A DNA stretch of 64,000 bases, from positions 124,001-188,000 of the IMG/VR virus record IMGVR_UViG_3300008111_000002. One strand, 5' to 3'. The translations under genes were made by a program, and so were the position numbers. The notes beneath the pieces are model-generated. The model saw only the letters and a list, made by a program, of their open reading frames with translations. It did not search any database and had not been told where the DNA came from. Positions 3,944-63,978 of the stretch are shown piece after piece; position 1 is the first letter of the stretch; each line of letters opens with the position of its first letter.

Positions 3944-3946
3944 ATA
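3941..3946 (+). promoter_or_regulatory. T4-like late promoter core (TAAATA)
   Basis: Overlaps the TAA of the upstream gene; AAGGA RBS follows before the ATG at 3966. Confidence 0.45.
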
Positions 3947-3965
3947 TTAAAAAGGATAGAAATAA

Positions 3966-11384: not shown

Positions 11385-11389
11385 TCAAC

Positions 11390-11416
11390 AAAAACCCCAC
11401 TTAGGTGGGGTTTTTT
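11390..11416 (+). terminator. rho-independent terminator (possibly bidirectional)
   Basis: AAAAACCCCAC-TTAG-GTGGGGTTTTTT directly after the stop at 11384. Confidence 0.9.
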
Positions 11417-11434
11417 GTTACCTTTTGATTATGA

Positions 11435-11440
11435 TAAATA
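11435..11440 (+). promoter_or_regulatory. T4-like late promoter core (TAAATA)
   Basis: GATAAATA between the terminator and the AGGTGG RBS of the gene at 11459. Confidence 0.65.
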
Positions 11441-11458
11441 ATAAAAAGGTGGGATAAC

Positions 11459-12526: not shown

Positions 12527-12537
12527 AGAGAAAAAAT

Positions 12538-40839: not shown

Positions 40840-41636
40840 GTTGGATTTTTTTAAACAACACTAAAAAATCTCAATATATAGAAATCTTTGCTAAAGGTTG
40901 CGGCAGTGAAGTAACTTCCTATGAAGATTTTGTATACGAAAACAATACTAACCCGTTAGTAATTCGCGGTATACTTAAAGATAAATTAATTAAACGTTGC
41001 TGGGAAGATCAACGCACGTTTTATTATTTCGATACTGGGTATATTGGTAATGACGTATATAATAAAAACCCAAGTGGTTATAAATTTTGGCATAGAATAG
41101 TAAAAAATAATTTACAACACAGTGAAATTATTTCCAGGCCCGATGATCGTTGGCGTCGATTAGGGAAAGAAATAAAACCCTGGAAGACTCCTGGTAAAAG
41201 AATAATTATAGCTGCTCCTGACGAGAAACCTTGCAAGTTTTATGGAATAAATCTAGATCAATGGTTAGAAAATGTTATTAGTATGTTAAAACAATATACC
41301 GATAGACCTATTGTTATTAGACAACGACCTGCAGATAGAATAGATCGAAAACAAAATATTCCATTAACTCAAGAGTTAGAAAATGATGCATTTGCATTGA
41401 TAACATTCAATAGTGTTGCAGCAACAGAAGCAATTTTAAACGGGATTCCGGCATTTACATTAGCACCTGCTAATGCTGCAAGTCCTGTAAGTTTACAAGA
41501 CTTAACCAAGATAGAAACCCCGTATTACCCTGATAAGGATAAATTATATTCATGGGTATGCCACATGGCTTATGGTCAATTTCATACTGATGAATTAAGA
41601 AACGGTACTGCTAAAAGAATTTTGGAAGAAACATGA
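40836..41636 (+). CDS. putative GT-B glycosyltransferase (KpsS-like), paralogue 2
   Basis: DTGY, TDRPIVIRQRP, TFNSVAATEAILNGIP and W..HMAYGQF..DEL.NG motifs. Confidence 0.6.
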   Translation: MSWIFLNNTKKSQYIEIFAKGCGSEVTSYEDFVYENNTNPLVIRGILKDKLIKRCWEDQRTFYYFDTGYIGNDVYNKNPSGYKFWHRIVKNNLQHSEIISRPDDRWRRLGKEIKPWKTPGKRIIIAAPDEKPCKFYGINLDQWLENVISMLKQYTDRPIVIRQRPADRIDRKQNIPLTQELENDAFALITFNSVAATEAILNGIPAFTLAPANAASPVSLQDLTKIETPYYPDKDKLYSWVCHMAYGQFHTDELRNGTAKRILEET

Positions 41637-42337
41637 AATTACATTTTATTACAAGTATATCAAAAACGTACTGGAACGATACTGCAAGATATTGCATTCC
41701 AACTTGGAAATTACCGGGTAAGACAACCATATACATCGATCAACACGACGGAGATTTAGATTGGATAGTTGAAGTTCCCTTTCACAAAGAATTACTAAGT
41801 GTTCCAGAATTATCAAACAAAGAAGTAGGTAGATCTAAGGTAAGAAAATTTTGGGGCAAGTCGTGGGCGCAAATAGATGCAATCAGAAATAGGGGCGTAG
41901 ATGAAAGAATAATCTGGATTGATTCAGATGTTGAACAAATTGCAGATGTTGGAGAGGAAGATTTTAATTTTAATTTTTCAGAACCATTTGCAATGATGAA
42001 TTCTGGTGATAACGAAGATTGTTGGGAAACTGGTTTAGTAATTTTTAATCAACAATACGGCAAATTAAATGTTGCGACTCGTTTATATGAAAAAGTATGG
42101 CGTGATGAGGAACAATTATTTGGTTTATTTAGACCATATGATGCACACGTATTAGGTTATGTTGCAGAAGAGAGAACCTTTTTAAATTTATGTAATCAAC
42201 CTTGTAAAAATATTGATGCGTTATCTAATTCTAGATTTAGTAAATTTTTTAAACATTGGATTAATAAAGATAATAAAAAACTGTTGCAAGATCTAAAAAC
42301 AACACAACCAAGTGAAAACAGTAGCGATATATCATAA
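41633..42337 (+). CDS. putative GT-A glycosyltransferase
   Basis: RKFWGKSWA, IIWIDSD (DxD), ETGLVIFN and YDAHV; paralogue of 46930..47739. Confidence 0.6.
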   Translation: MKLHFITSISKTYWNDTARYCIPTWKLPGKTTIYIDQHDGDLDWIVEVPFHKELLSVPELSNKEVGRSKVRKFWGKSWAQIDAIRNRGVDERIIWIDSDVEQIADVGEEDFNFNFSEPFAMMNSGDNEDCWETGLVIFNQQYGKLNVATRLYEKVWRDEEQLFGLFRPYDAHVLGYVAEERTFLNLCNQPCKNIDALSNSRFSKFFKHWINKDNKKLLQDLKTTQPSENSSDIS

Positions 42338-43244
42338 ATCAGTTCCTAACGGAAAAAATTTAGAGAAGATACAACTTTTACAAAATTTTTCTCAAGGAGT
42401 TCGTGCAGCAGGTGATACTGTACTTGATGTAGATCACTATAGTGTAGTTGCGGCCGATGTTGGAGTAATACAAGGATGGATATCTGGAAAACCAGATGCG
42501 CAACACACCATATTAAGAAATAATGTAATAACTCAACAAAAATTTCTTAATAGATTTGTTGTATGTGCTGATAGTAATTTATTTCTTTATGCTAATACAG
42601 ATAATCCATTGCATTATCTAAGATATAGTTTTAATGACGTTTTTCCTAATCAAGGAATATATTGTGATACAGAAATAGATCCTATAAGATGGATTAAAAT
42701 CTCACAAAATCTTAATATACATCTTAAACCATATAGAGCATACGGCGATCATATTTTAATACTATTACAACGCAACGGTGGTTGGAGTATGTCTGGATAT
42801 GATGTACAAGATTGGGCTATATCTGTTATTGATACTATACGATCTTTTACAGATAGACCCATAGTAATTAGAGCACACCCTGGAGATAAAGCAGCTAGAA
42901 CTTATCTTAATCCAGACAGTCCGCATTGCAGAATTAAATTTTCTAAACGTGTAAGATTAAGTAATAATACTAGACTAACTGATGATTTAGTAAATTGTTG
43001 GGCTGCTGTAAATTATAATTCAAGTCCAGCAGTCGGTGCAGCAATTGAAGGAATTCCAATTTTTGTAACTGATCCTATTAGAAGTCAAAGTGCGGAAATT
43101 GCTAATAGAGATTTATCACAAATTGAAAACCCAATGTTACCAGATAGGCAAAAGTGGGTTGAAAGATTATCAATGTTTCATTGGAATTTTAACGAATTAA
43201 GATCTGGTGAATGCTGGTCGCATATGAGAAAATTTATTTCATAA
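42312..43244 (+). CDS. putative GT-B glycosyltransferase (KpsS-like), paralogue 3
   Basis: GTG start; HILILLQ, TDRPIVIRAHP, YNSSPAVGAAIEGIP and PDRQKW...W...EL.SG motifs. Confidence 0.6.
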   Translation: MKTVAIYHKSVPNGKNLEKIQLLQNFSQGVRAAGDTVLDVDHYSVVAADVGVIQGWISGKPDAQHTILRNNVITQQKFLNRFVVCADSNLFLYANTDNPLHYLRYSFNDVFPNQGIYCDTEIDPIRWIKISQNLNIHLKPYRAYGDHILILLQRNGGWSMSGYDVQDWAISVIDTIRSFTDRPIVIRAHPGDKAARTYLNPDSPHCRIKFSKRVRLSNNTRLTDDLVNCWAAVNYNSSPAVGAAIEGIPIFVTDPIRSQSAEIANRDLSQIENPMLPDRQKWVERLSMFHWNFNELRSGECWSHMRKFIS

Positions 43245-48177: not shown

Positions 48178-49011
48178 ATGCGCATAAAATTATATCGTGA
48201 AAATGGTGCTCTTGGCAGTAACGTGGTTTTTGACGCTTTAGAACAAGGTTTTAAACGTCTTGGACATCAAATTGTTGACAGCAACGAGGACATTCCGGTG
48301 ATATGGAGTGTACTTTGGTTCGGCCGTATGCAGCCCAATCAACAAATTTACAATTTTTTTAAAAATAAAAATAAACCGGTAATGATAGTCGAAGTCGGTT
48401 CACTGAAAAGGGGAATTTCATGGAAACTTTCATTGGAAAATATCAACGGTGACGGAAAATTTAATCAAGAAAATCATTTACAAAAAAATAGACAAAAAGT
48501 TTTAGGTGTTGAGTTAAAAGATTTTCAAACAAACAGAAAACCCTCAATCCTATTATTGGGTCAACATGATCGCAGCCTCCAATGGGAAGGACTGCCATCA
48601 GTTAGTGACTGGATTTTTCAAAAAATTTCAGAAATTAGAAAATTTACCGATCGTACAATTGTAGTAAGACCACATCCACGTTGTCGTATTAATTATTTTT
48701 CAATACCAAATGTTGTTATCGAAACAACAAATCCAATACCTAACACATATTCTGAATTTGATATTAATTTTTCTCATCACTGCGTAATAAATCATAATAG
48801 TGGTACCACAGTACAGGCAGCAATTAATGGAGTTCCATTAATTTGTGATCCTAGTGCATTAGCACATCCGGTATCCTGTCAACTTAACGAAATAGAGACG
48901 CCATACCTCAAAGATAGAACACAGTGGTTTGAATACATTCTTCATACAGAATGGTTGTTGGACGAATTCATCCAGGGAACTCCACAAGAAAGGTTGATTT
49001 CATCGATGTGA
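48178..49011 (+). CDS. putative GT-B glycosyltransferase (KpsS-like), paralogue 4
   Basis: EVGSLKR, ILLLGQ..RSLQ, TDRTIVVRPHP, HNSGTTVQAAINGVP and DRTQW...EW..DE..QG motifs. Confidence 0.62.
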   Translation: MRIKLYRENGALGSNVVFDALEQGFKRLGHQIVDSNEDIPVIWSVLWFGRMQPNQQIYNFFKNKNKPVMIVEVGSLKRGISWKLSLENINGDGKFNQENHLQKNRQKVLGVELKDFQTNRKPSILLLGQHDRSLQWEGLPSVSDWIFQKISEIRKFTDRTIVVRPHPRCRINYFSIPNVVIETTNPIPNTYSEFDINFSHHCVINHNSGTTVQAAINGVPLICDPSALAHPVSCQLNEIETPYLKDRTQWFEYILHTEWLLDEFIQGTPQERLISSM

Positions 49012-49028: not shown

Positions 49029-50228
49029 ATGACCATCATCAGATATGTTGAAGACGTATTCATTGAATTTGCTCATGCAGTTGACCTGCGGCAAGTTTCT
49101 GTTCAGCCCCAGGACATACCAGCCATTAATAGTTTTCAGAATGTAATTCTCACAGGCAAACCGTTAACTAGAGCGCAATCTTCGTTTGTGTTGAAAATTT
49201 TAACCAAATACAAAATTGGCTCAAAGATGGTCGGTATTGACTACCACGACTCAATTGACAATCCCACATGGCGCCATCCGTTTAGAGTTATTGACAACAG
49301 TCGAAGTGTATCTGTAGAGCAGGACGAAGATGGTGGTTTACAAATTTTGATGAAATTTCCATATCAAATTAAAGAACCATTTGAAAAGGAATTACCTAAT
49401 TTAAAATCAATGTGGGATTCTACGTTAATGTCTAGAGTTATTAAACTAAAAGATGCTAACGTAATTGCCATTAGAGAATTCTGTGAAAAATACGAATTTG
49501 TGTTAGATCAAAGTTTCGTCGATTTGTGCGATTCAGTGGAAGAAATCTGGAATCAAGAAGAAAATTTTCTTCCACACTCTGTTGTCAAAAATAAGTTTGT
49601 AACATTGATTAATGCTAATGAAGATGCAAAAGAATATTTTGAAATCAATAAAACAGACAGTTTAGAAGAAAACATGTTCCTAGCAAAGAGCATGAATTTT
49701 TGCCTAAAATTGGAAGAAAAAAATCCAACGTTAATTCAAAAAATTGCCACTGCTCACGACAATTACTTTTATACCAACGACATTAAAAATGTGTTTGAAA
49801 TTTTAAAATCATTACCAACTGCAAAAGTAGCAGTGCTTGTTGATCGTACCTCCGAGACTCTAAACTTTGTTAAAAATTTTGTAAATTTTGCAGAAAATAC
49901 AAATTTTCCAAAAAACAATATTCGTGTATGTTTTAGGCTAAGTGCCGAAGAGGATAAAGATTTAAAATTTAATCAATGGATCAAAGAAAATCAAATGAAT
50001 GGTCCTGTGGACTCTGGAAGAATTTATATTTTTCGTCATAAGCCCGCAAAGTGGTTGTTTGCAGGAAAAGAAAATGTTAAAATTATAGTTACAAACAGTT
50101 TATTTACAAACACTAATATGAGCATTAGTCATTGGATGGACTCACACCCGTGTGTGATTTTTGTTGGAGAACAAAAACCTGCAATGAGAGCATTGTCAAC
50201 TAAGGAAAAAAAGATTGTCAACTTGTAA
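49029..50228 (+). CDS. hypothetical protein upstream of UvsW
   Basis: Start reassigned to MTIIRY (ATG 49029); 399 aa, overlapping the UvsW start. Confidence 0.65.
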   Translation: MTIIRYVEDVFIEFAHAVDLRQVSVQPQDIPAINSFQNVILTGKPLTRAQSSFVLKILTKYKIGSKMVGIDYHDSIDNPTWRHPFRVIDNSRSVSVEQDEDGGLQILMKFPYQIKEPFEKELPNLKSMWDSTLMSRVIKLKDANVIAIREFCEKYEFVLDQSFVDLCDSVEEIWNQEENFLPHSVVKNKFVTLINANEDAKEYFEINKTDSLEENMFLAKSMNFCLKLEEKNPTLIQKIATAHDNYFYTNDIKNVFEILKSLPTAKVAVLVDRTSETLNFVKNFVNFAENTNFPKNNIRVCFRLSAEEDKDLKFNQWIKENQMNGPVDSGRIYIFRHKPAKWLFAGKENVKIIVTNSLFTNTNMSISHWMDSHPCVIFVGEQKPAMRALSTKEKKIVNL

Positions 50229-51669
50229 GTTAATAATAAAAGACGAAGTCAACATAAAAATAGAAGGACTTGCTGTTGAAACTCGTAGAAAGATTGTCAA
50301 CAAATTAAAATTTGATCTTCCCTACGCTCGTCACATGCCTGCTTATAAATTAGGGCGGTGGGACGGAACAAAAACTTACTTTGGCATAGGCGGCAATGGG
50401 TATCTTGCACACCTAGATGTTATTCTTCCTATTATTGAAGAAAGCGGCTACGAGATTGAAGTAGACGACTTACGATTACATAAACAAATTTCTTTTGAAA
50501 GAGTCAACAAAAATTACTGGGCTGACAAAGGCAAGACCTGGCCCAAAGGTCATCCATCTGCGGGTCAACCTATTGTATTACGTGATTATCAATACGATGT
50601 TGTTAATAAATTTTTAGAAAATCCTCAGGCATTACAGGAAGTAGCAACTGGTGCAGGTAAGACTATTACCACTGCTACACTCAGTCATCTTTGTGAGCCC
50701 TATGGTCGTACAATGGTCATTGTTCCTAACAAGTCGTTAGTTGTTCAGACTGAAGAAGATTATAAAAATCTAGGACTTGATGTTGGTGTGTACTTTGGTG
50801 ATCGTAAAGAATTAGGAAAGACTCATACTATCTGTACATGGCAAAGTTTAAATGTATTAGACAAAAATAGTTATGATGAAGACGTTCTTTCTTTAGCGGA
50901 ATTTACTGAAGGAGTAGCAGCAATTATTGTCGACGAAGTTCATCAAGCCAAAGCAGACGTATTAACTAAACTATTAACACAAAATTTTAAAAACTGTGCT
51001 ATTAGATGGGGACTAACTGGAACTATTCCTAAAGAAGCATGGGAGTTCCAAGGCATCTTAGCCAGCATCGGGCCAGTAATTAATCAAGTGTCGGCACACG
51101 ATTTGCAAGAAAAGGGTGTGTTGGCAAATTTGCAAATTAATGTTTTACAAACAACCGATGTTCAAGTATTTAGAAGTTTTCAAGAAGAATATAGCTTTTT
51201 AGTTACTGATGCAACTAGACTAACGTGGATGGCAAATAAAATTAAAGAATTAGCACTAACAGGTAATACGCTGGTATTAATTAATAGGATTGACACAGGC
51301 AATCAACTAATTGAAAGAATACCCGAAGCGGTCTTTGTCAGTGGCGGTATGAAACTAAACGACAGGAAAGAAGAATATGATGAGATTAAGACAGCTGATA
51401 ACAAGATTATTGTGGCGACTTATGGTGTGGCCGCTGTGGGTATTAATATTCCAAGGATTTTTAATTTGGTTCTTATTGAGCCCGGAAAGAGCTTTGTCCG
51501 CGTTATACAAAGTATTGGGCGAGGCATTAGAAGAGCGGAAGACAAAGACTTTGTCCAAATTTGGGACATCACGAGCACCTGCAAGTACGCCAAGCGGCAT
51601 CTTACGGAAAGGAAGAAATATTACAAAGAGGCCAAATACCCCTTTACATTAACCAAGGTAACATTATGA
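50215..51669 (+). CDS. uvsW: SF2 DNA helicase UvsW
   Basis: TTG start after AAGGA; WDG, LRDYQ, ATGAGKT, DEVH, GLTGT and QSIGRGIR motifs. Confidence 0.92.
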   Translation: MSTCKLIIKDEVNIKIEGLAVETRRKIVNKLKFDLPYARHMPAYKLGRWDGTKTYFGIGGNGYLAHLDVILPIIEESGYEIEVDDLRLHKQISFERVNKNYWADKGKTWPKGHPSAGQPIVLRDYQYDVVNKFLENPQALQEVATGAGKTITTATLSHLCEPYGRTMVIVPNKSLVVQTEEDYKNLGLDVGVYFGDRKELGKTHTICTWQSLNVLDKNSYDEDVLSLAEFTEGVAAIIVDEVHQAKADVLTKLLTQNFKNCAIRWGLTGTIPKEAWEFQGILASIGPVINQVSAHDLQEKGVLANLQINVLQTTDVQVFRSFQEEYSFLVTDATRLTWMANKIKELALTGNTLVLINRIDTGNQLIERIPEAVFVSGGMKLNDRKEEYDEIKTADNKIIVATYGVAAVGINIPRIFNLVLIEPGKSFVRVIQSIGRGIRRAEDKDFVQIWDITSTCKYAKRHLTERKKYYKEAKYPFTLTKVTL

Positions 51670-52993: not shown

Positions 52994-53462
52994 ATTAGAC
53001 CTATTCAAAGATATCATTCCAGCTGTTGATTCTGGCATTAAAGATCTTTGGGACGCTTTAGAAGAGGATCAACAGAAAGAATTAAAAAAACTTTTGTTTG
53101 TTCTTGGACGCTGGATCAGCAGCCCAGTCTCTAGTGATCCGGATGTTCAAGCTCACTATATTTTAACTGTTAACGAATATTATAATAAAAATTATTATAA
53201 GTTTTATAACCATCCTAAACTGTTATGGTTACTGTTAACTATGTGTGCTAATCCTAAAGGAAAAGTTGTTAGAAGAGAATATATAAAGTTATCTAGAAAG
53301 GCAGAAGGTTCTAGTAAAAAACATAAATTTTTATTAGATAGATATCCTAGCGCCAAGTTAGATGACGTTGAACTATTGGCTAAAATTTTAACTGACGACG
53401 AAGTTAAACAAATTGCCAAAGACATGGGACTTGATAATAAACAAATCAAAGAACTTCTATAA
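52986..53462 (+). CDS. putative clamp-loader small subunit (T4 gp62-like)
   Basis: F.L.RW.S...VNE..N...HPKL.W.LL...YIK...KILT.DE pattern is reminiscent of gp62; replication context. Confidence 0.45.
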   Translation: MSKLDLFKDIIPAVDSGIKDLWDALEEDQQKELKKLLFVLGRWISSPVSSDPDVQAHYILTVNEYYNKNYYKFYNHPKLLWLLLTMCANPKGKVVRREYIKLSRKAEGSSKKHKFLLDRYPSAKLDDVELLAKILTDDEVKQIAKDMGLDNKQIKELL

Positions 53463-54133
53463 TGTTTGTTTGTGAATACTGTAAAAAAGAATTTGTCAAA
53501 GAAAAGACTCTGTTTGTTCATGTATGTGAACAGAAGCGTAGACACTTGAACAAAGGAGAAAAACATGTACAGGCTGGGTTTATGGCCTATACCAAGTTCT
53601 ATGAGGTAGCACAAAAAAATACTAAAAAAACTTTTGAAGACTTTGTAGAAAGCCCTTACTACACAGCATTTGTAAAGTTTGGCAGTTTTTTCGTTAACAC
53701 AAATCCAATTTATCCAGAACGATTTATAGAATTTGTAATACGCAGTAATACAAAATTAGATGCGTGGTGTAGTGATAATTTATATGACATATACATTGCT
53801 GAGTTAATCAAACAAGAACCAGCAGATGGTTCTATACAAAGAACTATACAAACAATGATGGACTGGGCTGATAAAAATAACTCAACTTGGGAACACTATT
53901 TTTTGTATGTGAATTTAAACAGACTAACACATGATATAAAAGAAGGATTAATCAGTCCGTGGATGTTGTTAAATATTCAATCAGGAAAAGACGCACTGCA
54001 AAAAATGAATGATGAACAGTTGGAAATTATCAGTACTATAATTGATCCACAATTTTGGAAACGTAAATTTAAAAACTATCCTGCAGATGTTGAACTAATT
54101 AAAGATGTTATCAAAGAAGCGAAAATATTATAA
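53462..54133 (+). CDS. hypothetical protein with N-terminal C2HC zinc finger
   Basis: CEYCKKEF..EKTL..HVC. Confidence 0.65.
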   Translation: MFVCEYCKKEFVKEKTLFVHVCEQKRRHLNKGEKHVQAGFMAYTKFYEVAQKNTKKTFEDFVESPYYTAFVKFGSFFVNTNPIYPERFIEFVIRSNTKLDAWCSDNLYDIYIAELIKQEPADGSIQRTIQTMMDWADKNNSTWEHYFLYVNLNRLTHDIKEGLISPWMLLNIQSGKDALQKMNDEQLEIISTIIDPQFWKRKFKNYPADVELIKDVIKEAKIL

Positions 54134-54360
54134 TGCCTAAGAAAAAACAAGAACCGGAAGTAGTAGAACAAGATCTAGCAGAAAACGAAGAACCTCTTTC
54201 TAGAGATGATTTAGATATCGAAGTTGCTGTTGGTAGCGAGGAACCTGTTGTATATGTAAAGTTCAGCGGCTTTGAGGACATTGAAGATGCTGAAGAATAT
54301 GCAGAGTTTCTTGCAGAAACTTTACCACTATTGTTATTTGAGTCAACAAGGTTACAGTAA
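54133..54360 (+). CDS. small acidic hypothetical protein
   Basis: 75 aa, TAATG-coupled on both sides. Confidence 0.6.
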   Translation: MPKKKQEPEVVEQDLAENEEPLSRDDLDIEVAVGSEEPVVYVKFSGFEDIEDAEEYAEFLAETLPLLLFESTRLQ

Positions 54361-54938
54361 TGCCAGATATTGATATTGACTTTGCAGATAGAACAAAAGC
54401 ATTGGCTTTGTTCAAACATCACAGAGCCAGCAGAGTAGAAGATAACAAATTAGTAGTTCATAACACAGGTGTTTATTTTCATCCTGTGCCAATTGATGCA
54501 AGAACTAATCTTTCGTCAATACCATATGATCAAGCAGAAGAACAAGGATTTTTTAAAATTGATTTTCTCAATGTAGGAATCTATAAAAATATCAAAGATG
54601 AAAATCATCTTAAGACTTTAATGGAGACTGAACCACTATGGGATTTACTGTTACAGGACGACTTCGTGAACTTATTGTTCCATGTGAATGGGCATGGGTC
54701 TATTCTAAGAGAGATGGAACCAAAATCTATAGAAGAATTGGCAGCAGTACTGGCAATGATAAGACCCGCGAAACGTTATCTGATTGGGAAGCCATGGACT
54801 ACGGTGATGAACGAGATCTGGACGAAACCAGAGAATGACGAATACTACTTTAAAAAGAGTCATGCTACTGCGTATGCTCTTTCAATTATAGTTCAAATGA
54901 ATCAAATTTGTGAAAGTATTAGTTACGGTTATAGTTAA
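54360..54938 (+). CDS. miniature DNA polymerase III alpha (DnaE)-like catalytic core, 192 aa
   Basis: MPDIDIDF, HNTGVY, GFFKIDFLNV, PKSIEELAAVLAMIRP and YYFKKSHATAYA correspond in order to DnaE palm/finger motifs. Confidence 0.85.
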   Translation: MPDIDIDFADRTKALALFKHHRASRVEDNKLVVHNTGVYFHPVPIDARTNLSSIPYDQAEEQGFFKIDFLNVGIYKNIKDENHLKTLMETEPLWDLLLQDDFVNLLFHVNGHGSILREMEPKSIEELAAVLAMIRPAKRYLIGKPWTTVMNEIWTKPENDEYYFKKSHATAYALSIIVQMNQICESISYGYS

Positions 54939-55306
54939 CCAGCTTTTCTAATTAATACTATGCTTCTACGTTTAATTCTTTTGGTGATAATTTGATTTAG
55001 ACTTACGCAAGGCCCAAGCATTAATTTAACATCTTTGGTACTGAAATTTCTAATAGCGTATCTAAAAGGTTGTATTTCTTTAGCTAGAAAAATACTAATA
55101 GGAATTTGTCTATTTGATTCCCACCACCAAGCTTCCCCTAGTTCTAAAAATCTAGTTTTTTCTTCTTCGCTTTTTAAAGAAGTGTAATCATACATGCTAG
55201 TGATACTAGAGTCTTGATTAATAATAATGCCCACATATTCTTTGTCAACGTAGTTTATAACACTTATAAATGGGAAGTTTTGTTGTAAGTTTTCTGTTAT
55301 TCTCAT
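54935..55306 (-). CDS. hypothetical protein
   Basis: 123 aa with FPFIS, EYVGII.N and WWWESNR.IPI motifs. Confidence 0.65.
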   Translation of the reverse strand: MRITENLQQNFPFISVINYVDKEYVGIIINQDSSITSMYDYTSLKSEEEKTRFLELGEAWWWESNRQIPISIFLAKEIQPFRYAIRNFSTKDVKLMLGPCVSLNQIITKRIKRRSIVLIRKAG

Positions 55307-55336: not shown

Positions 55337-56092
55337 ATGCAATTTAATCCAAGTTATTTATACGCAAACAAAGTGGACGTTTTCAGCGATCTTGGCTCCT
55401 GGCAAACTGAGAGGTATCGCAAAGTGTATCAACGCACCCTAAAAATTTATCGCGGAGTCGATAATCCTATAGATTTTCAAGTTCGCAACTCTGATCAAAA
55501 ACCCCAATCCATTGCTGGACAAACTGTGGTATTTAATCTTTTTGCTTATGAGTCGCAAGAACTTATTATGTCCAGAGATTGTACAGTTGTAGATGCTGTT
55601 AAAGGTAAAGTATCTGTAACTATCAGTGAAGGAGAAGCATTAACGCTAACTCCTGGATTTTATACATTTTCTTTATATACTCTATCCAATGGTATTAAAA
55701 AACCATTGTACGGAGACAGCCAATTTGGCGCACTGGGTAGATTAGAATTAATTGGTAACGTGTATGGTAATGTTATACCTACAGATATCATAACAACTTT
55801 TAATACAGAAAGTACGTATAAAGTCAGCAGCATCATTGATGCCAAACCGCATTTGAATAATAATTCTGCACTGCATACTTTTGCGTTCTATGGAACTGCA
55901 TATAGTGGTAGTGTAGTAATTCAAGCAAGCATGGACGAAAATACCACTACTGGAAATTGGATTGATCTAGCAACAATTCCATTAACCAATTCTTCAATAT
56001 CATATAAAAATATAGAAGGCGTTTGGAGTTGGTTTAGAATCAAGCATACTCAAACTGCTGGAACACTTGACAAAGTATTGTATAGATATTAA
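55337..56092 (+). CDS. putative virion structural protein (BppU-like/Ig-like beta domains)
   Basis: KIYRGVDNPIDFQV.N.DQKP...GKVSVTI...L..G.Y.FS pattern; late promoter. Confidence 0.55.
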   Translation: MQFNPSYLYANKVDVFSDLGSWQTERYRKVYQRTLKIYRGVDNPIDFQVRNSDQKPQSIAGQTVVFNLFAYESQELIMSRDCTVVDAVKGKVSVTISEGEALTLTPGFYTFSLYTLSNGIKKPLYGDSQFGALGRLELIGNVYGNVIPTDIITTFNTESTYKVSSIIDAKPHLNNNSALHTFAFYGTAYSGSVVIQASMDENTTTGNWIDLATIPLTNSSISYKNIEGVWSWFRIKHTQTAGTLDKVLYRY

Positions 56093-56101: not shown

Positions 56102-57118
56102 ATGACTCTGGTCTTAGATACCCTACGTACATTACTGCCATATAAAAGAAAGCAAACACCAAGTGGTTGGATTAGCTTTAATGCTCCCTGTTGTCATCAT
56201 CGTGGTCACAAATCAGATGATAGACTAAGAGGCGGAGTCACATTTAATGAAGGTTTTGTATATCACTGTTTTAACTGTGGATTTTCTACAGGTTGGCAAC
56301 CAGGTCGTCCAATATCTTTTAAATTACGAGAATTATGTAGTTGGTTGGGTGCGTCAGATGATACTATAAAACGATTAATATTTGAAGCTTTAAAAACCGA
56401 ACGACCAGATTATGTAAATCAACATTACACCCCTCCAGTTGAATTTACCAAAAAAGAATTACCAGAAGGTAGTTTGCCGTTAATAGAATGGATGCAGGAA
56501 AAATTAGATGTAGAAACTGAACAAAAAATATTGTTAGTGATACAATATCTTATTGATCGTGGATTTAATCCGTTGGCAGAAAACTTTTATTGGTCACCGT
56601 TAGCGGGTTATGACAATAGAGTTATAATTCCGTTTTTGTATCATGGTCAAACTGTAGGTAGTACTGCAAGACGCATTACACCTGGAAAGCCAAAGTATCT
56701 TTCAGATCAGCATCCAAACTTTGTATTCAATATGGATGCACAGGCTAATGATAGAAAATATGTAATTGTCTGCGAAGGTCCATTTGATGCACTGGCAATT
56801 GGCGGTGTTGCACTTCTCACAAACGAAATTTCTGAACAACATGCTAGGATAATTAATAGTCTATCCCGTCAAGTTATTTTCGTTCCAGATCAAGATAAAG
56901 CAGGTATAGCAGGTATCGATAAAGCTAGAGAATTGGGTTGGAGCGTAGCATTCCCTAATTGGAATAGCAGTATCAAAGATTGTGCCGATGCAGTGAAAGA
57001 ATACGGAAAAATGTTTACTATTGTTGATATTATAAAGACATCAGTTAGTGGTAATATAAAAATTAATTTGATGAAAAATCAAATGATTAAAAGGATTAAA
57101 AATGTTCAGACTAATTGA
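56102..57118 (+). CDS. gp61: DNA primase (T4 gp61-like)
   Basis: Zn ribbon PCC...YHCFNC, YL..RG, RVIIPF and KYL; TOPRIM VCEGPFDA and PDQD. Confidence 0.9.
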   Translation: MTLVLDTLRTLLPYKRKQTPSGWISFNAPCCHHRGHKSDDRLRGGVTFNEGFVYHCFNCGFSTGWQPGRPISFKLRELCSWLGASDDTIKRLIFEALKTERPDYVNQHYTPPVEFTKKELPEGSLPLIEWMQEKLDVETEQKILLVIQYLIDRGFNPLAENFYWSPLAGYDNRVIIPFLYHGQTVGSTARRITPGKPKYLSDQHPNFVFNMDAQANDRKYVIVCEGPFDALAIGGVALLTNEISEQHARIINSLSRQVIFVPDQDKAGIAGIDKARELGWSVAFPNWNSSIKDCADAVKEYGKMFTIVDIIKTSVSGNIKINLMKNQMIKRIKNVQTN

Positions 57119-57194
57119 AAAAATAAAAGAATACATTAAAAGAAAACGTAGATTAAAAGAACTACGTAAAAGAGATCCGTTTATCTATAAATGA
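57102..57194 (+). CDS. 30-aa basic microprotein MFRLIEKIKEYIKRKRRLKELRKRDPFIYK (absent from the ORF track)
   Basis: AAGGA RBS at 57091, ATG 57102; stop overlaps the carbamoyltransferase start (ATGA). Confidence 0.7.
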   Translation: MFRLIEKIKEYIKRKRRLKELRKRDPFIYK

Positions 57195-58660
57195 TTACTT
57201 GGGGGATTTCGGCTAACAGTCACAATGCTGCACTTGCAGTATTTGATGAAGATCATTTAATATTTGCCAGTGAATCGGAAAGATTTAGCAAAATTAAAAA
57301 TGATCCGCATCTACATCACGATTTAATTGACTACGCAAAAACTATTGCGGGCGAACCTGATCTAGTATGTTGGTATGAAAAGCCGTGGCTGAAAACCATG
57401 CGTCAAATATTTGCAGGACAAGATTTTGAATACAATAGTGTTAAAAAATATTTGTCTAGGTACAGCATTAATGCCCCTATAAAAACATTTAGACATCATC
57501 ACAGTCATGCAGCAGCAGGTTATTATACCAGTACATTTAAAGATGCATGTGTTATTGTTATTGATGCAATTGGAGAATTTGAAACTTTATCAATTTGGAA
57601 AGGTCAAGGTAAGAATTTAACAAAAGTATATTCACTTTCTTATCCTGACAGCATTGGTTTATTTTACTCTGCAATGACACAACGATGTGGTTTAAAACCC
57701 AATGAAGAAGAGTACATTCTTATGGGCATGGCCGCATATGGTGACTATTCAGTGTTATTGAGAGACGTAACAAAAGATTTTATACATTTTCCAACTGATT
57801 ATAAACATCCTGTGTTGTTTAAACAAAATTTACATAGAGGATGCAACTGGTGGAAACCTGAACTACAATCTCCTAAGCAGTTATTTGATATTGCAGCCGC
57901 AACACAGAAGATGTATGAAATTTGTTTTGTTAGAATTTTACAGTTCGCACAACAACTTGTTGAAAGTGAAAATTTAGTGTTAATGGGAGGCTGTGCTTTA
58001 AATTGCTCAGCTAATTCAAAAATCTTTGATTACTTTAATGATGCATGGATCATGCCTGCACCAGGGGATAGCGGATCAGCCATTGGTGCAGTGTTAGCAC
58101 ACAAAGGAACACGTATTAAATGGACAGGACCGTATTTAGGTTACGATATTAGTCCACGAAAATTAAACAGAGAAATTGTTGAATACTTACAGATAAACAA
58201 AATATGTGGAGTAGCTAGAGGCCCTGCAGAATTTGGTCCACGTGCATTGGGCAATAGGAGCTTACTGGCAGATCCCAGGGATCCTAGTATAAAAGATCGT
58301 GTAAACGAAATAAAGAAAAGAGAAACATTTAGACCATTTGCGCCTGCTATATTAGAAGAACATGCCAACAGGTATTTTGTAATGCCTACAAAGAAAAGTC
58401 CATATATGCAATACACTGCATATTGTCTACAACCAAATTTATTTCCTTCTATTGTTCACAAAGACGGAACCAGTAGAGTTCAAACAGTTGGTCCTAATGA
58501 TAATCCTAAATTTAGAGAACTGTTAGAAATGTGGTATGCTAAAACAGGATGCCCTATGTTGTTGAATACCAGTTTGAATATAAAAGGCGAACCTATAGTA
58601 AACGACCTAGCAGATTCAATGACTTGGGCCAGTACCTATGGTTTACCTGTTTTTAATTAG
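57191..58660 (+). CDS. carbamoyltransferase (NodU/CmcH/TobZ family)
   Basis: ERFSKIKND, HHHSHAA, DAIGE, MGMAAYG, GGCALN, PGDSG, EFGPRALGNRS, KKRE.FRPFAP, H.DGTSRVQTV and LLNTSLN motifs. Confidence 0.93.
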   Translation: MITWGISANSHNAALAVFDEDHLIFASESERFSKIKNDPHLHHDLIDYAKTIAGEPDLVCWYEKPWLKTMRQIFAGQDFEYNSVKKYLSRYSINAPIKTFRHHHSHAAAGYYTSTFKDACVIVIDAIGEFETLSIWKGQGKNLTKVYSLSYPDSIGLFYSAMTQRCGLKPNEEEYILMGMAAYGDYSVLLRDVTKDFIHFPTDYKHPVLFKQNLHRGCNWWKPELQSPKQLFDIAAATQKMYEICFVRILQFAQQLVESENLVLMGGCALNCSANSKIFDYFNDAWIMPAPGDSGSAIGAVLAHKGTRIKWTGPYLGYDISPRKLNREIVEYLQINKICGVARGPAEFGPRALGNRSLLADPRDPSIKDRVNEIKKRETFRPFAPAILEEHANRYFVMPTKKSPYMQYTAYCLQPNLFPSIVHKDGTSRVQTVGPNDNPKFRELLEMWYAKTGCPMLLNTSLNIKGEPIVNDLADSMTWASTYGLPVFN

Positions 58661-58677: not shown

Positions 58678-60102
58678 ATGATTGACAATTACAGTCCCGA
58701 AACACAAAAAATATTCTTAGAAATGATGATGGCTGATGCTGAATCTTATTTCAGATGTCAAAGCATCTTTGATCACAGTCTATTTGATCGACGTTATCAA
58801 GAATCTGCCGAATTTATTAAAGTATACGTTGATCAATATCGAGCAATGCCAGAATATAACATGGTCAATGCTGCCTGTAACACAGATTTTAAAAAGCCAG
58901 ACAGCGTTAAAGAAGGCCATGTAGATTGGCTATTGGATAGTTTTGAAAAATTTGTAAGACACAAAAGTATTGAACGTGCAATCATTAATTCTGCAGATCT
59001 ATTAGACAAAGGCGATTATGGATCTGTTGAAACTATGATTAAAGAAGCAGTACAGATTGGTCTTGCTAAAGATATGGGCACTGACTACTTTGCAGATCCT
59101 AAATCACGATTAATGGGATTAAAAGATAAAAACGGACAAATATCTACTGGCTGGAAAAATCTTGATAATAGATTGTTTGGCGGTATGAATCGTGGCGAGC
59201 TTAATATTTTTGCTGGTGGTAGTGGTGCAGGTAAATCATTATTTCTTGCAAACCTTGGTCTTAATTGGGCAATGGCTGGATTAAATGTTGTCTATGTAAC
59301 ATTAGAACTTAGTGAAGCATTAGTTAGTATGCGTATTGACAGTATGCTAACAGGAATTCCAACAAAAGAAATTTTTAAAGATATTGAAAACGTTGAAACC
59401 AAAGTTAAACTGATTGGAAAGAAGGCAGGTGCATATCAGATCAAATATGTACCAAGTGGTAAAAATGTTAACGATCTAAGAGCGTATATTAAAGAATTTG
59501 AAATTAAAACAGAACGTAAGGTTGATGTTATCTTAGTTGACTACTTAGACTTACTAATGCCAATCAGCAGAAAGATTAGTCCTGCAGATTTGTTCATCAA
59601 AGACAAATATGTTTCTGAAGAACTGCGTAACTTTGCAGTTGAACGTAAAGCTATTCTAGTCACAGCCGCACAGTTGAATCGAGGTGCTGTAGAAGAAGTA
59701 GAATATGATCACAGTCATATCTCAGGAGGACTTAGTAAGATTCAAACTGCAGATAATGTGTTTGGTATTTTTACATCACGTGCTATGAGAGAGCGAGGAC
59801 GTTATCAATTACAATTAATGAAAACTAGATCATCAAGCGGTGTAGGAATGAAAGTAGATCTAGAATTTAATTTAGAAAGTCTAAGGATCAGCGATCTACC
59901 CGAAGATGAACAAGAATCCAGTGGAGGTATGCGTCCTACTTCTGGAATATTAGATGACATAAAACGCAAAGCCACAGTAAAGGCCCATCAAGAGGACTCT
60001 GAACCAAATCCATTCCAAGGTGCTGCTGTACCTAAAGTAAGAGCCAATGTTGAGAGCACGAAACTGCGGGATCTGCTGAACAATATTGGTAATGAAGAAT
60101 AG
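58678..60102 (+). CDS. gp41: replicative DNA helicase (T4 gp41/DnaB-like)
   Basis: ISTGW..LD..L.GG, Walker A GGSGAGKS, YVTLEL, VDYLDL, TAAQLNR and MKTR. Confidence 0.93.
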   Translation: MIDNYSPETQKIFLEMMMADAESYFRCQSIFDHSLFDRRYQESAEFIKVYVDQYRAMPEYNMVNAACNTDFKKPDSVKEGHVDWLLDSFEKFVRHKSIERAIINSADLLDKGDYGSVETMIKEAVQIGLAKDMGTDYFADPKSRLMGLKDKNGQISTGWKNLDNRLFGGMNRGELNIFAGGSGAGKSLFLANLGLNWAMAGLNVVYVTLELSEALVSMRIDSMLTGIPTKEIFKDIENVETKVKLIGKKAGAYQIKYVPSGKNVNDLRAYIKEFEIKTERKVDVILVDYLDLLMPISRKISPADLFIKDKYVSEELRNFAVERKAILVTAAQLNRGAVEEVEYDHSHISGGLSKIQTADNVFGIFTSRAMRERGRYQLQLMKTRSSSGVGMKVDLEFNLESLRISDLPEDEQESSGGMRPTSGILDDIKRKATVKAHQEDSEPNPFQGAAVPKVRANVESTKLRDLLNNIGNEE

Positions 60103-62513: not shown

Positions 62514-62737
62514 TATTTGATCGTTTGACACCTGACTTGGTGTTGCCTTTTAGACGTTGGAGTCGTATTAGACGTATAAGAAATGCACTAAGAGGAATTC
62601 AAAGGTGTCATCCGGCGATCAAATTTAAAACTATACGCAAGGATAATATTATTACTGTAGAATTTGAAACTGGGTCGATGTTGACCCAGTTTGCACTTTT
62701 GTGGCGAGCTGATTTGCCCGCTTGGCGTAGACTTTAG
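62483..62737 (+). CDS. hypothetical basic protein (start uncertain)
   Basis: Fills the gap up to the convergent BI-1 gene; TTG start. Confidence 0.4.
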   Translation: MDTILDSVSIVFDRLTPDLVLPFRRWSRIRRIRNALRGIQRCHPAIKFKTIRKDNIITVEFETGSMLTQFALLWRADLPAWRRL

Positions 62738-63420
62738 TCGTTACGTTGACCAAATAGCTGTAGAAGGCTAAGAAAGATATTGATAAAGTTCAAGTACAGA
62801 CTTAGTGCGCCCCATACTTCCATCTTACCGTCATTTTCATAGCTGATCATCTGGCGAATGTTCTGTGTGTCGTAGGCAGTTAGTCCTAGAAAGATCACAA
62901 TGGCAATTGCCGAAATCACCATCTGCATTACCGAGCTGCCAATAAAAATGTTAATAATGCTGGCAATGACAATGGCAATCAAACCCACAAACATAAACTG
63001 ACCCATACTGGTCAAATCACGTTTGGTAAAATAACCATAACCACTCATAACACCAAACAACACTGCTGCGGCCATGAATGCTGACACAATTGACCCCATG
63101 TTATAGACCACAAAGATCGTGGCAAAACTCAGACCCATGATGGCAGCAAAACCATGTAGGAAAATCTGTAGGGTACTTTTGCTCATACGCTCGTAGGCAA
63201 AGCCTGCGGCCAAAATAGCTACCAGCGGAGCAAACATCACTAGCCATTTTAAGGGTGTGCCAAACAGCAGAGCCATCAATGCAGGACTGCCAGCTACCAG
63301 AGCACTGACAATCATACTGGTCAACACAGCCAATCCCATGTGACCATAGACTCGACCCATGGCTGAATTGATTTCTCTAGCGGAACGGTAGATTCCCGTA
63401 CCTAGTGTAGCGTCAAACAT
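62734..63420 (-). CDS. Bax inhibitor-1/YccA family membrane protein
   Basis: About 7 hydrophobic helices; RVY.HM.L, YGY.TKRDL, GLTAYDTQ.I and GALSLYLNFINIFLSLL; AGGAG RBS. Confidence 0.92.
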   Translation of the reverse strand: MFDATLGTGIYRSAREINSAMGRVYGHMGLAVLTSMIVSALVAGSPALMALLFGTPLKWLVMFAPLVAILAAGFAYERMSKSTLQIFLHGFAAIMGLSFATIFVVYNMGSIVSAFMAAAVLFGVMSGYGYFTKRDLTSMGQFMFVGLIAIVIASIINIFIGSSVMQMVISAIAIVIFLGLTAYDTQNIRQMISYENDGKMEVWGALSLYLNFINIFLSLLQLFGQRND

Positions 63421-63540: not shown

Positions 63541-63978
63541 ATGTTAAGCATCATTACACAAATCACAGAAGAAATACAGGAACTGATCAAGGACGATCCA
63601 GTTCGTCCGGAAATTCCTCTAGAGCAGCGCATCAATCAACAGAGTAAAATCTACGTGTTAAAAGACGACGGTACCGGTAAGGCCAGTGCTGTGGTATGTG
63701 TGAAATTTTTACCCAAAATCCCCGAATCAGTTGATGAACTGTTGAACACCATGAATGGCAGTTCTACCGCAGTGTTCTATACCATTTGGTCATATGCACA
63801 GGGTGCCGGACGAACATTGATAGAACAAGCTCAAGCAGAAATCAAACAGCACAATCCCGAAGTAACTACCTTTGTGACCCTAAGCCCCAAAACAGAAATG
63901 GCCCGCAAATTCCACCACAAAAACGGTGCCACTACCTACAGAGAAAATGCTGACTCAGTTAACTATCTTTACAAATAA
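63541..63978 (+). CDS. small GNAT-fold protein resembling the malonyl-CoA decarboxylase catalytic core
   Basis: TAVFYTIWS...GAGRTLI...E....PEVTTFVTLSP and ARKFHHKNGA motifs. Confidence 0.6.
   Translation: MLSIITQITEEIQELIKDDPVRPEIPLEQRINQQSKIYVLKDDGTGKASAVVCVKFLPKIPESVDELLNTMNGSSTAVFYTIWSYAQGAGRTLIEQAQAEIKQHNPEVTTFVTLSPKTEMARKFHHKNGATTYRENADSVNYLYK

What the first reader, a model, noticed from the sequence alone, without database searches (positions are those of the whole stretch)
54360..54938. A 192-aa minimal C-family (DnaE) polymerase with all three catalytic aspartates
Seen: an intact ORF with PDIDIDF, HNTGVY, KIDFL, PxSxEELAAVLAMIRP and FKKSHATAY in the correct order. Known: bacterial DnaE is >1000 aa, with catalytic Asp residues in PDxDxD and KxDxL and nucleotide-binding finger motifs RPG and FNKSH. 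Here PHP, thumb, most of the fingers, HhH and OB regions are removed by several separate in-frame internal deletions, which argues for selection rather than decay. Inference: a stripped-down nucleotidyltransferase with a new job (primer extension or hand-off near the primase and helicase, end-tailing, or use of modified dNTPs) in a phage type that normally replicates with a family B polymerase.
Basis: partly seen in the sequence, partly recalled or inferred. Interest (0 to 1): 0.8.

Follow-up and report, generated by a model that had tools for sequence, protein, structure and literature searches.

The report
Half of a split mini-DnaE polymerase
The 192-residue gene is real and conserved, but it is the already described C-terminal half of a two-piece miniature DnaE-type DNA polymerase of T4-like jumbo phages, not a complete polymerase.

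Summary
D3, D5 and D68 (E. coli alpha D401, D403, D555) and the steric-gate His (H168 = H760) are invariant or nearly so across about 400 sequence clusters. Length is fixed at 188-193 aa in close relatives and dN/dS is about 0.1. An AlphaFold model (pLDDT 96.6) matches only PolIII-alpha/PolC structures in the PDB.

It is not a stand-alone enzyme. It starts exactly at the DxD strand and lacks the GRGS nucleotide-binding element of the same fold. That element sits in a separate ~170-aa protein (PHROG 11127, Pfam PF07733) that ends six residues before the split point. This partner occurs in the same cultured jumbo phages (Atu_ph07, Paride/PA5oct, RaK2-like). Rare natural 375-aa proteins carry both halves fused.

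Iyer et al. 2021 (PMC7824862) already described this "split minimal PolIII alpha" of group 2.2 jumbo phages. No biochemical characterisation turned up in the literature searches.

New here:
- The C-half lies in a conserved UvsW-primase-DnaB block.
- The N-half lies in a Cpn10-clamp-loader cassette.
- Unsplit forms exist.

The N-half of this phage's own genome was not found in the 187 kb examined. That leaves roughly a quarter to a half of the genome unexamined.

The parts
54360..54938 (+). C-terminal (Mg2+-binding palm plus reduced fingers) subunit of the split minimal PolIII-alpha, 192 aa
   Evidence: (phrog_11778 E 9e-70)
54366..54380 (+). DxDxD strand: D3, D5 (= E. coli D401, D403) and D7
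   Evidence: D3 and D5 invariant in 92 diverse representatives, D7 conserved in at least 90%; alignment to Mtb/Taq alpha MPDIDIDF
54555..54569 (+). KIDFL: K66 and third catalytic Asp D68 (= E. coli K553, D555)
   Evidence: K66 and D68 invariant; aligned to KFDFLG of E. coli alpha 538-641
54720..54767 (+). PKSIEELAAVLAMIRP finger helix ending in R135-P136 (= E. coli ALFRPG, about 636-641)
   Evidence: P136 invariant, R135 conserved in at least 90%; alignment
54849..54875 (+). FKKSHATAY O-helix start; H168 = steric-gate H760 of E. coli alpha
   Evidence: K165 and H168 conserved in at least 90%; alignment 739-768; H760 role from PMC8485763
54133..54360 (+). 75-aa acidic ORF, stop overlapping the polymerase ATG by one base (likely translationally coupled); function unknown
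   Evidence: no family hit
53462..54133 (+). conserved upstream neighbour (phrog_11058; Paride_0016 and Atu gp077 homologue)
54935..55306 (-). conserved convergent 123-aa neighbour (phrog_11637; Paride_0018, Atu gp073). A similarly placed reverse ORF next to the unsplit gene in L422 matches Paride_0018 but gave no direct hit to the window copy.
55337..56092 (+). conserved neighbour annotated virion structural protein in Atu_ph07 (gp072)
56102..57118 (+). DnaG-type (Toprim) primase
58678..60102 (+). DnaB-type replicative helicase
   Evidence: (PF03796)
50215..51669 (+). UvsW-like SF2 helicase opening the conserved block
   Evidence: (ResIII, DEAD, Helicase_C)

Best explanation
The ORF encodes the C-terminal subunit of a two-polypeptide, miniature C-family (DnaE-type) DNA polymerase found in T4-like 'group 2.2' jumbo phages. 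This subunit carries the metal-binding strands (D3, D5, D68), the template/nucleotide-contacting finger helices (IRP, FKKSH) and the steric-gate His, which points to dNTP rather than rNTP use. It cannot form the Pol-beta-like nucleotidyltransferase core alone, because it lacks the helix-loop with the GRGS motif that holds the incoming triphosphate. A separate ~170-aa protein supplies that part (E. coli alpha 239-392). It ends at '...DLDxxEFL[KR]', six residues before the point where this ORF starts. Inferred: the two chains associate non-covalently (there is no room for intein halves) into a ~370-aa polymerase core. That core has no PHP, thumb, clamp-binding or OB domains, so it should be distributive unless other replisome proteins hold it. 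The C-half gene is fixed in a UvsW-primase-DnaB block and the N-half gene in a Cpn10-clamp-loader cassette. The most likely job is therefore an auxiliary replisome polymerase beside the main family B enzyme, for example extending primase products or gap/repair synthesis. Shown here: homology, fold, residue conservation, purifying selection, the partner family, natural fusions and gene neighbourhoods. Inferred: heterodimer assembly, DNA polymerase activity and the replisome role.
For: Family: phrog_11778 E 9e-70; 96 cultured jumbo phages at 35-54% identity; at least 7969 90%-clusters; 408 50%-clusters. Fold: AF2 pLDDT 96.6, pTM 0.88; Foldseek top 14 PDB hits all PolIII-alpha/PolC. Mapping: C-half to alpha 399-431, 538-641 and 739-768; N-half profile to alpha 239-392. 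Partner: Atu_ph07 gp316 ends GVGRGSCVSSYILY...DLDFSEFLE; phrog_11127 E 2e-70 and PF07733; invariant GxGRGS..SY. The partner occurs in the same phage genera with matching record counts (Escherichia 34/34, Pseudomonas 11/11, Erwinia 8/8, Salmonella 8/8, Xanthomonas 4/4, Klebsiella 10/11). Natural fusions P0250, P0304 and P0305 (375-376 aa, three 90%-clusters, ENA and Logan): residues 6-180 match the N-half and 188-375 match this ORF. The fused model has pLDDT 88.4 and its top 18 Foldseek hits are all C-family polymerases, best E 1.5e-8. Selection: dN/dS 0.09-0.14 over 926 pairs; 43 invariant residues in 75 sequences. Context: synteny with Atu_ph07 and Paride; N-half cassette with Cpn10 and an RFC-like clamp loader. 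Literature: Iyer et al. 2021 describe exactly this split minimal PolIII alpha. Steric gate H760: PMC8485763.
Against: The N-half gene of this phage's own genome was not found. It is absent from the window. It is also absent from window-equivalent -9.8 to +177.5 kb, reconstructed from overlapping contigs of the same population. That stretch includes the places where relatives carry it (next to Bax1-I, next to the CTP-transferase-like gene, after S21/Hsp20/ClpS). At least 75 kb and possibly about 200 kb remain unexamined. No family B polymerase or clamp loader was seen in the examined part either, so the core replication genes lie in the unexamined part. No biochemistry exists for any member. 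Assembly of the two chains was not modelled; only the natural fusion was. Expression evidence is two 151-nt metatranscriptome contigs, which could be carried-over DNA.
Confidence: 0.85

Rival explanations
1. Stand-alone 192-aa minimal nucleotidyltransferase: the ORF alone binds metal, primer and nucleotide and does a new job such as tailing or primer hand-off.
For: All three Asp, the IRP and KKSH motifs are conserved. The chain folds confidently on its own in AF2. No N-half was found in 187 kb of this genome.
Against: It lacks the GS-motif element that defines Pol-beta-fold nucleotidyltransferases and precedes the DxD in all DnaE. A dedicated partner family ends exactly at the split point and co-occurs in all cultured relatives. 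Natural fusions exist.
Confidence: 0.05
2. The C-half works with a partner other than the phage N-half in this lineage (for example a host DnaE fragment or another phage protein), or it has a non-polymerase nucleotidyl-transfer or purely structural role in the helicase-primase complex.
For: The usual N-half neighbourhoods in this genome lack it. The gene is always embedded in the UvsW-primase-DnaB block.
Against: Catalytic and steric-gate residues are under strict conservation in this clade as in the cultured phages that have the N-half. A quarter to a half of the genome is unexamined, and the clamp loader that travels with the N-half has not been seen yet either. This suggests the whole cassette lies in the unexamined part.
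Confidence: 0.08
3. Decaying remnant of a captured bacterial dnaE (pseudogene fragment).
For: It is much shorter than DnaE, and the Pfam hit is below the gathering score (15.5 against 22 bits).
Against: dN/dS is 0.09-0.14. Length is fixed at 188-193 aa in 74 unique CDS (66 of them 192 aa), 72 of which start with ATG. Homologues form 408 clusters at 50% identity with an invariant catalytic triad. Synteny is conserved from Agrobacterium and Pseudomonas phages to this freshwater phage.
Confidence: 0.01

Closest known systems
Split minimal DNA polymerase III alpha of group 2.2 jumbo phages (Iyer, Anantharaman, Krishnan, Burroughs, Aravind 2021, Viruses 13:63); e.g. Atu_ph07 gp074 + gp316, Paride_0017 + Paride_0087
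   Same: Same family (phrog_11778), same length, same start at the DxDxD strand, same neighbours (UvsW helicase, reverse small ORF, primase, DnaB); 51% identity to Atu_ph07, 44% to the PA5oct group.
   Different: It comes from an uncultured freshwater jumbo phage with cyanophage-like auxiliary genes. The partner gene is not at any of the positions seen in relatives and has not yet been located.
Bacterial PolIII alpha (DnaE; E. coli 2HNH, Taq 2HPI/4IQJ, Mtb DnaE1 5LEW) and PolC (3F2B)
   Same: Pol-beta-like palm with D401/D403/D555 equivalents, the K553 equivalent, FRPG and FNKSH finger motifs and steric-gate His; the only structural neighbours in the PDB.
   Different: It lacks the PHP domain, the N-terminal palm part with GRGS (on another chain), the thumb (~432-510), ~97 residues of fingers (642-738) and everything after ~782 (clamp-binding, HhH, OB, tau-binding). 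It is 192 aa against 1160 aa.
Natural unsplit mini-PolIII alpha (P0250, P0304, P0305; 375-376 aa, metagenomic)
   Same: The C-terminal 188 residues are 37-38% identical to the window ORF. The gene lies in a similar local context: a reverse small ORF related to Paride_0018 and a downstream gp072-like gene.
   Different: The N-half and C-half are joined in one chain by a ~9-residue linker. The form is rare (3 clusters against hundreds of split ones).
Intein-split DnaE of cyanobacteria (dnaE-n/dnaE-c; from my own knowledge, not tested here)
   Same: A C-family polymerase encoded by two distant genes.
   Different: There the halves are full-size and are joined by protein trans-splicing at a different site. 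Here the N-half ends and the C-half begins with polymerase sequence, so there is no room for intein halves and assembly must be non-covalent.
Bacillus subtilis DnaE as primer-extending polymerase beside PolC (PMC3664799, title and abstract seen)
   Same: A second, C-family polymerase working with primase and helicase beside the main replicase. This is the functional analogy proposed for the phage enzyme.
   Different: B. subtilis DnaE is full length. The analogy is inference only.

Membership tests
C-family DNA polymerase catalytic subunit (PolIII alpha / DnaE / PolC) | Pol-beta-like palm with three catalytic carboxylates (E. coli D401, D403, D555) | tested here: met
   D3, D5 and D68 aligned to them and invariant; fold match
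C-family DNA polymerase catalytic subunit (PolIII alpha / DnaE / PolC) | GS (GRGS) triphosphate-binding motif upstream of the DxD in the same chain | tested here: not met
   The ORF starts at the DxD; no GRGS-type motif in any window ORF of at least 80 aa; the motif lies in the separate N-half family
C-family DNA polymerase catalytic subunit (PolIII alpha / DnaE / PolC) | N-terminal PHP domain | tested here: not met
   No PF02811 hit; the protein begins at the alpha-399 equivalent
C-family DNA polymerase catalytic subunit (PolIII alpha / DnaE / PolC) | Thumb domain and full fingers | tested here: not met
   The profile alignment skips alpha ~432-510 and 642-738; Foldseek alignments span 361-372 columns for 192 residues
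C-family DNA polymerase catalytic subunit (PolIII alpha / DnaE / PolC) | Finger motifs FRPG and FNKSH with steric-gate His | tested here: met
   IRP 134-136 and FKKSH 164-168, conserved; H760 role from PMC8485763
C-family DNA polymerase catalytic subunit (PolIII alpha / DnaE / PolC) | Clamp-binding, HhH, OB and tau-binding C-terminal region | tested here: not met
   The chain ends ~24 residues after H168
C-family DNA polymerase catalytic subunit (PolIII alpha / DnaE / PolC) | Pfam gathering score for PF07733 / PF17657 | tested here: not met
   Only PF17657 at 15.5 bits against a cut-off of 22
Split minimal PolIII alpha of group 2.2 jumbo phages, C-terminal subunit (PHROG 11778) | ~190-aa protein matching the family profile end to end and starting at the DxDxD strand | tested here: met
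   phrog_11778 E 9e-70, residues 3-186 to profile 8-194/197
Split minimal PolIII alpha of group 2.2 jumbo phages, C-terminal subunit (PHROG 11778) | Separate N-terminal (NTP-binding) subunit gene elsewhere in the same genome | tested here: inconclusive
   Present in cultured relatives and many metagenomic contigs. Not found in the window or in 187 kb of this phage's genome.
Split minimal PolIII alpha of group 2.2 jumbo phages, C-terminal subunit (PHROG 11778) | T4-like group 2 jumbo-phage background (gp23-type capsid, UvsW, DnaB, DnaG primase, ATP ligase) | tested here: met
   PF07068 Gp23 and the S77 prohead protease lie just upstream of the window; UvsW-like helicase, primase, DnaB; ligase; contigs of 209-261 kb
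Split minimal PolIII alpha of group 2.2 jumbo phages, C-terminal subunit (PHROG 11778) | Accompanied by a family B DNA polymerase | tested here: inconclusive
   Atu_ph07 has gp276/277. No PolB homologue in the window or the walked region, so it must lie in the unexamined part if present.
Split minimal PolIII alpha of group 2.2 jumbo phages, C-terminal subunit (PHROG 11778) | Template-directed DNA polymerase activity of the two-chain enzyme | not testable with these tools
   No biochemical study found

The most novel reading that the evidence does not exclude
The two halves are kept in different replisome gene modules: the C-half with UvsW, primase and DnaB, the N-half with a co-chaperonin-like gene and the clamp loader. 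In this freshwater lineage the N-half has left all its usual positions. The most novel reading not excluded is that the split is functional. The active site would be assembled only when a helicase-primase-bound C-half meets a clamp-loader-associated N-half, acting as a built-in switch for primer hand-off. Alternatively, this lineage may have lost the N-half and the C-half may use another partner.
Probability: 0.1. Interest if true: 0.7.

Novelty: new member of a known kind. Interest (0 to 1): 0.35.

Why it matters
A ~370-aa, two-chain C-family polymerase would be by far the smallest enzyme of the bacterial replicase family. It bears on how that family arose: as an ancestral minimal core, as Iyer et al. 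argue, or by reduction. It is abundant, with thousands of variants in freshwater, soil and gut jumbo phages. It is under strong selection, and I found no report that it has been assayed. For this window the practical message is an annotation one. The gene should be called 'PolIII-alpha-like polymerase, C-terminal subunit', not a complete polymerase. Claims about its activity need the partner chain.

Tried and rejected
1. Search for the partner in the window. Regex for GRGS-type motifs, tblastn with Atu gp316 and 26 N-halves, and a max-sensitivity HMM search all found nothing.

2. Search for the partner near the C-half in 80 related contigs (+/-10 kb): none. Near the Bax1-I gene: 3 of 80 relatives, not this phage.

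3. Chromosome walk with the look-up of encoding contigs and the search for related loci from the window end to about +177.5 kb and to -9.8 kb. No N-half, Cpn10, clamp loader or PolB was seen. The walk beyond +86 kb runs on other contigs of the same population, linked by 100% identical proteins, so a strain difference cannot be excluded.

4. Alignment-based scans for N-halves in viral contigs and genome-contig hit the 600-row/80-locus caps and never listed this phage's contigs.

5. A syntenic 206-aa ORF upstream of the CTP-transferase-like gene was checked as a possible divergent N-half. It is not one.

6. MAFFT placed N-halves onto the C-part of the fused protein when many distant C-halves were included (A4 and A5). 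Those alignments were discarded and a checked smaller set (A6) was used.

7. P0224 (3678 aa, 48 'stretches') is a 76-aa tandem-repeat protein, a false positive.

8. The small ORFs upstream of the N-half, the C-half and the fused gene are not detectably related to each other.

9. RNA evidence: only two 151-nt contigs in one metatranscriptome, too thin to claim expression.

10. Megablast of window 50-60 kb against cultured phages found no match.

Full report
**1. Observation**

The window holds an intact ATG-initiated ORF at 54360..54938 on the + strand, 192 aa. Its start overlaps the stop of a 75-aa acidic ORF by one base (TAATG).
- PDIDIDF at residues 2-8
- HNTGVY at 34-39
- KIDFL at 66-70
- PKSIEELAAVLAMIRP at 121-136
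- FKKSHATAY at 164-172

A single-sequence search of PDB chains finds only PolIII alpha (Mtb, Taq), and the motifs align in order. Pfam gives only a sub-threshold finger-domain hit (15.5 against 22 bits). PHROGs gives an end-to-end match to phrog_11778 'DNA polymerase' (E 9e-70).

**2. The family**

- tblastn finds a ~190-aa homologue in 96 cultured jumbo phages at 35-54% identity. These include Sinorhizobium Phosso, Agrobacterium Atu_ph07, Pseudomonas PA5oct/Paride, the RaK2/121Q/GAP32/CBB group and a Xanthomonas jumbo phage.
- The metagenomic protein collection holds at least 7969 90%-clusters. Nearly all of the best hits are 192 aa.
- An exhaustive HMMER scan finds 408 clusters at 50% identity, typically 185-215 aa.
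- In 75 unique close relatives, 43 residues are invariant, including D3, D5, D7, K66, D68, R135, K165 and H168. Lengths are 188-193 aa.
- In 92 representatives at 33-60% identity, D3, D5, K66, D68 and P136 are invariant. D7, H34, G37, R135, K165 and H168 are at least 90% conserved.
- Pairwise Nei-Gojobori dN/dS is 0.09-0.14 (926 pairs).

So the gene is functional and its size is selected.

**3. Fold and mapping to DnaE**

AlphaFold2 with the 92-sequence alignment gives pLDDT 96.6 and pTM 0.88. Foldseek against the PDB returns PolIII alpha of Taq, Mtb and E. coli, plus PolC, as the 14 best hits and nothing else credible. TM normalised to the query is up to 0.61 over 361-372 alignment columns, which means large insertions in DnaE.

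The family profile aligns as follows:

| Window residues | E. coli alpha residues | Content |
|---|---|---|
| 1-14 (up to 1-62 on Taq) | MPDIDIDF region, about 399 on | DxD strand |
| 53-139 | 538-641 | D555, FRPG |
| 150-178 | 739-768 | FNKSH |

Relative to DnaE the protein therefore lacks:
- the PHP domain
- the first part of the palm
- the thumb (~432-510)
- ~97 residues of fingers (642-738)
- everything after ~782

H168 corresponds to H760, the proposed steric gate against ribonucleotides (PMC8485763). That argues for dNTP use.

**4. It is half an enzyme**

The literature search showed that Iyer et al. 2021 (PMC7824862) had already described this. [quoted passage not shown] I verified this independently.

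- Atu_ph07 gp316 (177 aa, phrog_11127 E 2e-70) ends '...GVGRGSCVSSYILYIIGVHKVNSIKYDLDFSEFLE'.
- 26 relatives share an invariant GxGRGS..SY.LY..H..S..Y pattern, and most end at or within a residue or two of 'EFL[KR]'. They carry PF07733.
- Their profile aligns to E. coli alpha 239-392, ending at 'FERFL'. The window ORF begins at the equivalent of 'MPDFDVDF' (~399).
- The break therefore falls in a six-residue linker, between the GS motif and the DxD strand of one Pol-beta-like nucleotidyltransferase core.
- The window ORF has no GS element.
- The N-half occurs in the same cultured phages with matching record counts per host genus. It lies 34-44 kb (RaK2, GAP32, PA5oct) or 183-224 kb (Atu_ph07, Phosso) from the C-half.

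Decisive 'Rosetta-stone' evidence comes from three metagenomic clusters (P0250, P0304, P0305; 375-376 aa; ENA and Logan). They carry both halves in one chain, joined by about nine residues. Residues 6-180 match Atu gp316, and residues 188-375 match Atu gp074 and the window ORF. A model of P0250 (alignment A6, checked for correct register) has pLDDT 88.4. Its 18 best PDB neighbours are all C-family polymerases, with a better E-value (1.5e-8) than the C-half alone.

**5. Gene neighbourhoods**

The C-half lies in a block conserved from Atu_ph07 and Paride to this phage:
- UvsW-like helicase
- three to five small genes
- C-half
- convergent ~120-aa ORF (phrog_11637)
- a gp072-like 'virion' protein
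- DnaG-type primase
- (here a carbamoyltransferase)
- DnaB

The unsplit gene sits in a matching context: a reverse ~120-aa ORF related to Paride_0018 and a downstream gp072-like gene.

The N-half lies in a different conserved cassette, the same in Atu_ph07 (gp316-gp312) and Paride (0087-0090):
- tail-fibre gene
- two small genes
- N-half
- a small gene (Atu gp315 / Paride_0088 family)
- Cpn10-like gene
- a variable slot that collects accessory genes
- RFC-like clamp loader

I did not find this two-module arrangement described in the 2021 paper.

**6. The partner in this phage's own genome**

It is not in the window. The window is part of IMG/VR UViG_3300008111_000002, the same sequence as JGI contig Ga0114344_1000002 (209.8 kb). 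I walked along overlapping contigs of the same population. Each hop was linked by a 100% identical protein.
- To the right I reached window-equivalent +177.5 kb.
- To the left I reached -9.8 kb.
- I saw no N-half, Cpn10, clamp loader or family B polymerase.

Three accessory genes flank the N-half in relatives: Bax1-I at window 62734-63420, a CTP-transferase-like gene and a 69-aa gene. All three are present in this genome, but without the N-half next to them.

Paride has the order C-half ... RNR ... S21, Hsp20, ClpS ... ligase ... MazG, N-half, clamp loader, PhoH. This phage shares the S21-Hsp20-ClpS run. The cassette is therefore most likely further to the right, together with the other missing core replication genes.

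The contigs together span at least 261 kb and perhaps ~350-385 kb. At least 75 kb and up to ~200 kb were therefore not examined. I regard presence of the partner as likely but not shown.

**7. Mechanism**

Shown:
- homology, fold, the conserved catalytic triad and steric gate
- purifying selection
- a complementary partner family
- natural fusions
- replisome gene contexts

Inferred:
- The two chains associate non-covalently. The N-half ends and the C-half starts with polymerase sequence, so intein-mediated splicing as in cyanobacterial DnaE is excluded by size. This comparison rests on my own knowledge.
- Together they form a ~370-aa DNA polymerase core without thumb, proofreading PHP or clamp-binding parts.
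- It serves as a second, auxiliary polymerase beside the family B replicase. Possible roles are extension of primase products or gap and repair synthesis. [quoted passage not shown] Rivals:
- Stand-alone activity of the C-half.
- A different partner or a non-polymerase role.
- Gene decay.

These are weighed in the rival section. Decay is excluded by the data.

**8. Novelty and verdict**

- The kind is known: it was published in 2021. JGI labels near-identical proteins 'DNA polymerase III alpha subunit'. GenBank labels relatives 'DNA polymerase' or 'DnaE-like DNA polymerase III alpha'.
- This ORF is a new, uncultured member.
- Its central claim, a complete 192-aa polymerase, is not supported.
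- Points worth keeping: no member appears to have been assayed, unsplit forms exist, and the two halves are tied to the helicase-primase module and the clamp-loader module respectively.

Interest is moderate (0.35).

Noticed in passing
P0250, P0304, P0305; locus L422:519-1649: Natural unsplit 375-376-aa mini-PolIII alpha (N-half + ~9-residue linker + C-half). It lies in a context like that of the C-half: a reverse ~119-aa ORF related to Paride_0018 and a gp072-like gene downstream. It is rare compared with the split form.
   Followed up: yes
L103:2387-6247, L083, L145 and others; Atu_ph07 L002:33821-36381; Paride L425:45805-47939: The N-half sits in a conserved cassette with a small partner gene, a Cpn10/GroES-like gene and the RFC-like clamp loader. 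A variable slot between them collects accessory genes (Bax1-I, a CTP-transferase-like gene and others).
   Followed up: yes
L431:3037-4764 (-), IMGVR_UViG_3300017764_005380: A contiguous ~560-aa DnaE-like ORF with no detectable PHP region (TRGSAGSS ... PDVDIDY ... KVDILANRG ... IRP ... CRAHA, plus a C-terminal extension) lies beside DnaB in a more distant relative. It looks like an intermediate-size C-family polymerase.
   Followed up: partly
L001:6001-6567 (Atu_ph07 gp074, NC_042013.1 58304-58798): The RefSeq CDS starts 72 nt downstream of where homology begins, which cuts off the DxDxD strand with two catalytic Asp. The residue aligned to M1 is Ile, so the true start is unclear.
   Followed up: partly
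window 57191-58660 (+): A carbamoyltransferase (Carbam_trans_N/C, 489 aa) is inserted between primase and DnaB. It is not in that position in Atu_ph07 or Paride.
   Followed up: no
window 62734-63420 (-) and 63541-63978 (+): A Bax1-I family membrane protein and an ORF with a malonyl-CoA decarboxylase (MCD) Pfam hit. In several relatives the Bax1-I gene sits inside the N-half cassette.
   Followed up: partly
window-equivalent about +117 to +150 kb (L272, L376, L412): A cyanophage-like set of auxiliary genes: class I RNR, glutaredoxin, peroxiredoxin, PstS-like protein, porin O/P, ribosomal protein S21, IMPDH, HSP70, HSP20, ClpS, heme oxygenase and a ferredoxin-dependent bilin reductase. The samples are freshwater lake metagenomes, so the host may be a cyanobacterium.
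   Followed up: no
window 599-18294 and 23480-26836 (+); L423:372-3291: Giant structural ORFs (1114, 2472, 1918 and 1118 aa; one with a CBM_5_12 hit). The gp23-type major capsid protein and the S77 prohead protease lie just upstream of the window start.
   Followed up: no
window 40153-43244 and 48178-49011: Several paralogous ~230-310-aa ORFs (40836-41636, 42312-43244, 48178-49011). A homologue sits directly after the N-half in contig L128.
   Followed up: no
window 54626-54776 and 54895-55045: One freshwater metatranscriptome (run X1) holds two 151-nt contigs identical to the window, inside and at the end of the ORF, and nothing on the flanking 4 kb. This is too little to call expression.
   Followed up: partly
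P0224: A 3678-aa protein made of ~48 copies of a 76-aa repeat scored E 3e-32 against the query through summed weak repeats. It is a false positive of the exhaustive search.
   Followed up: yes
P0317, P0318: 540-551-aa proteins with PHP + PF07733 only, seen as weak hits to the fused query. They may be truncated or differently split DnaE forms.
   Followed up: no
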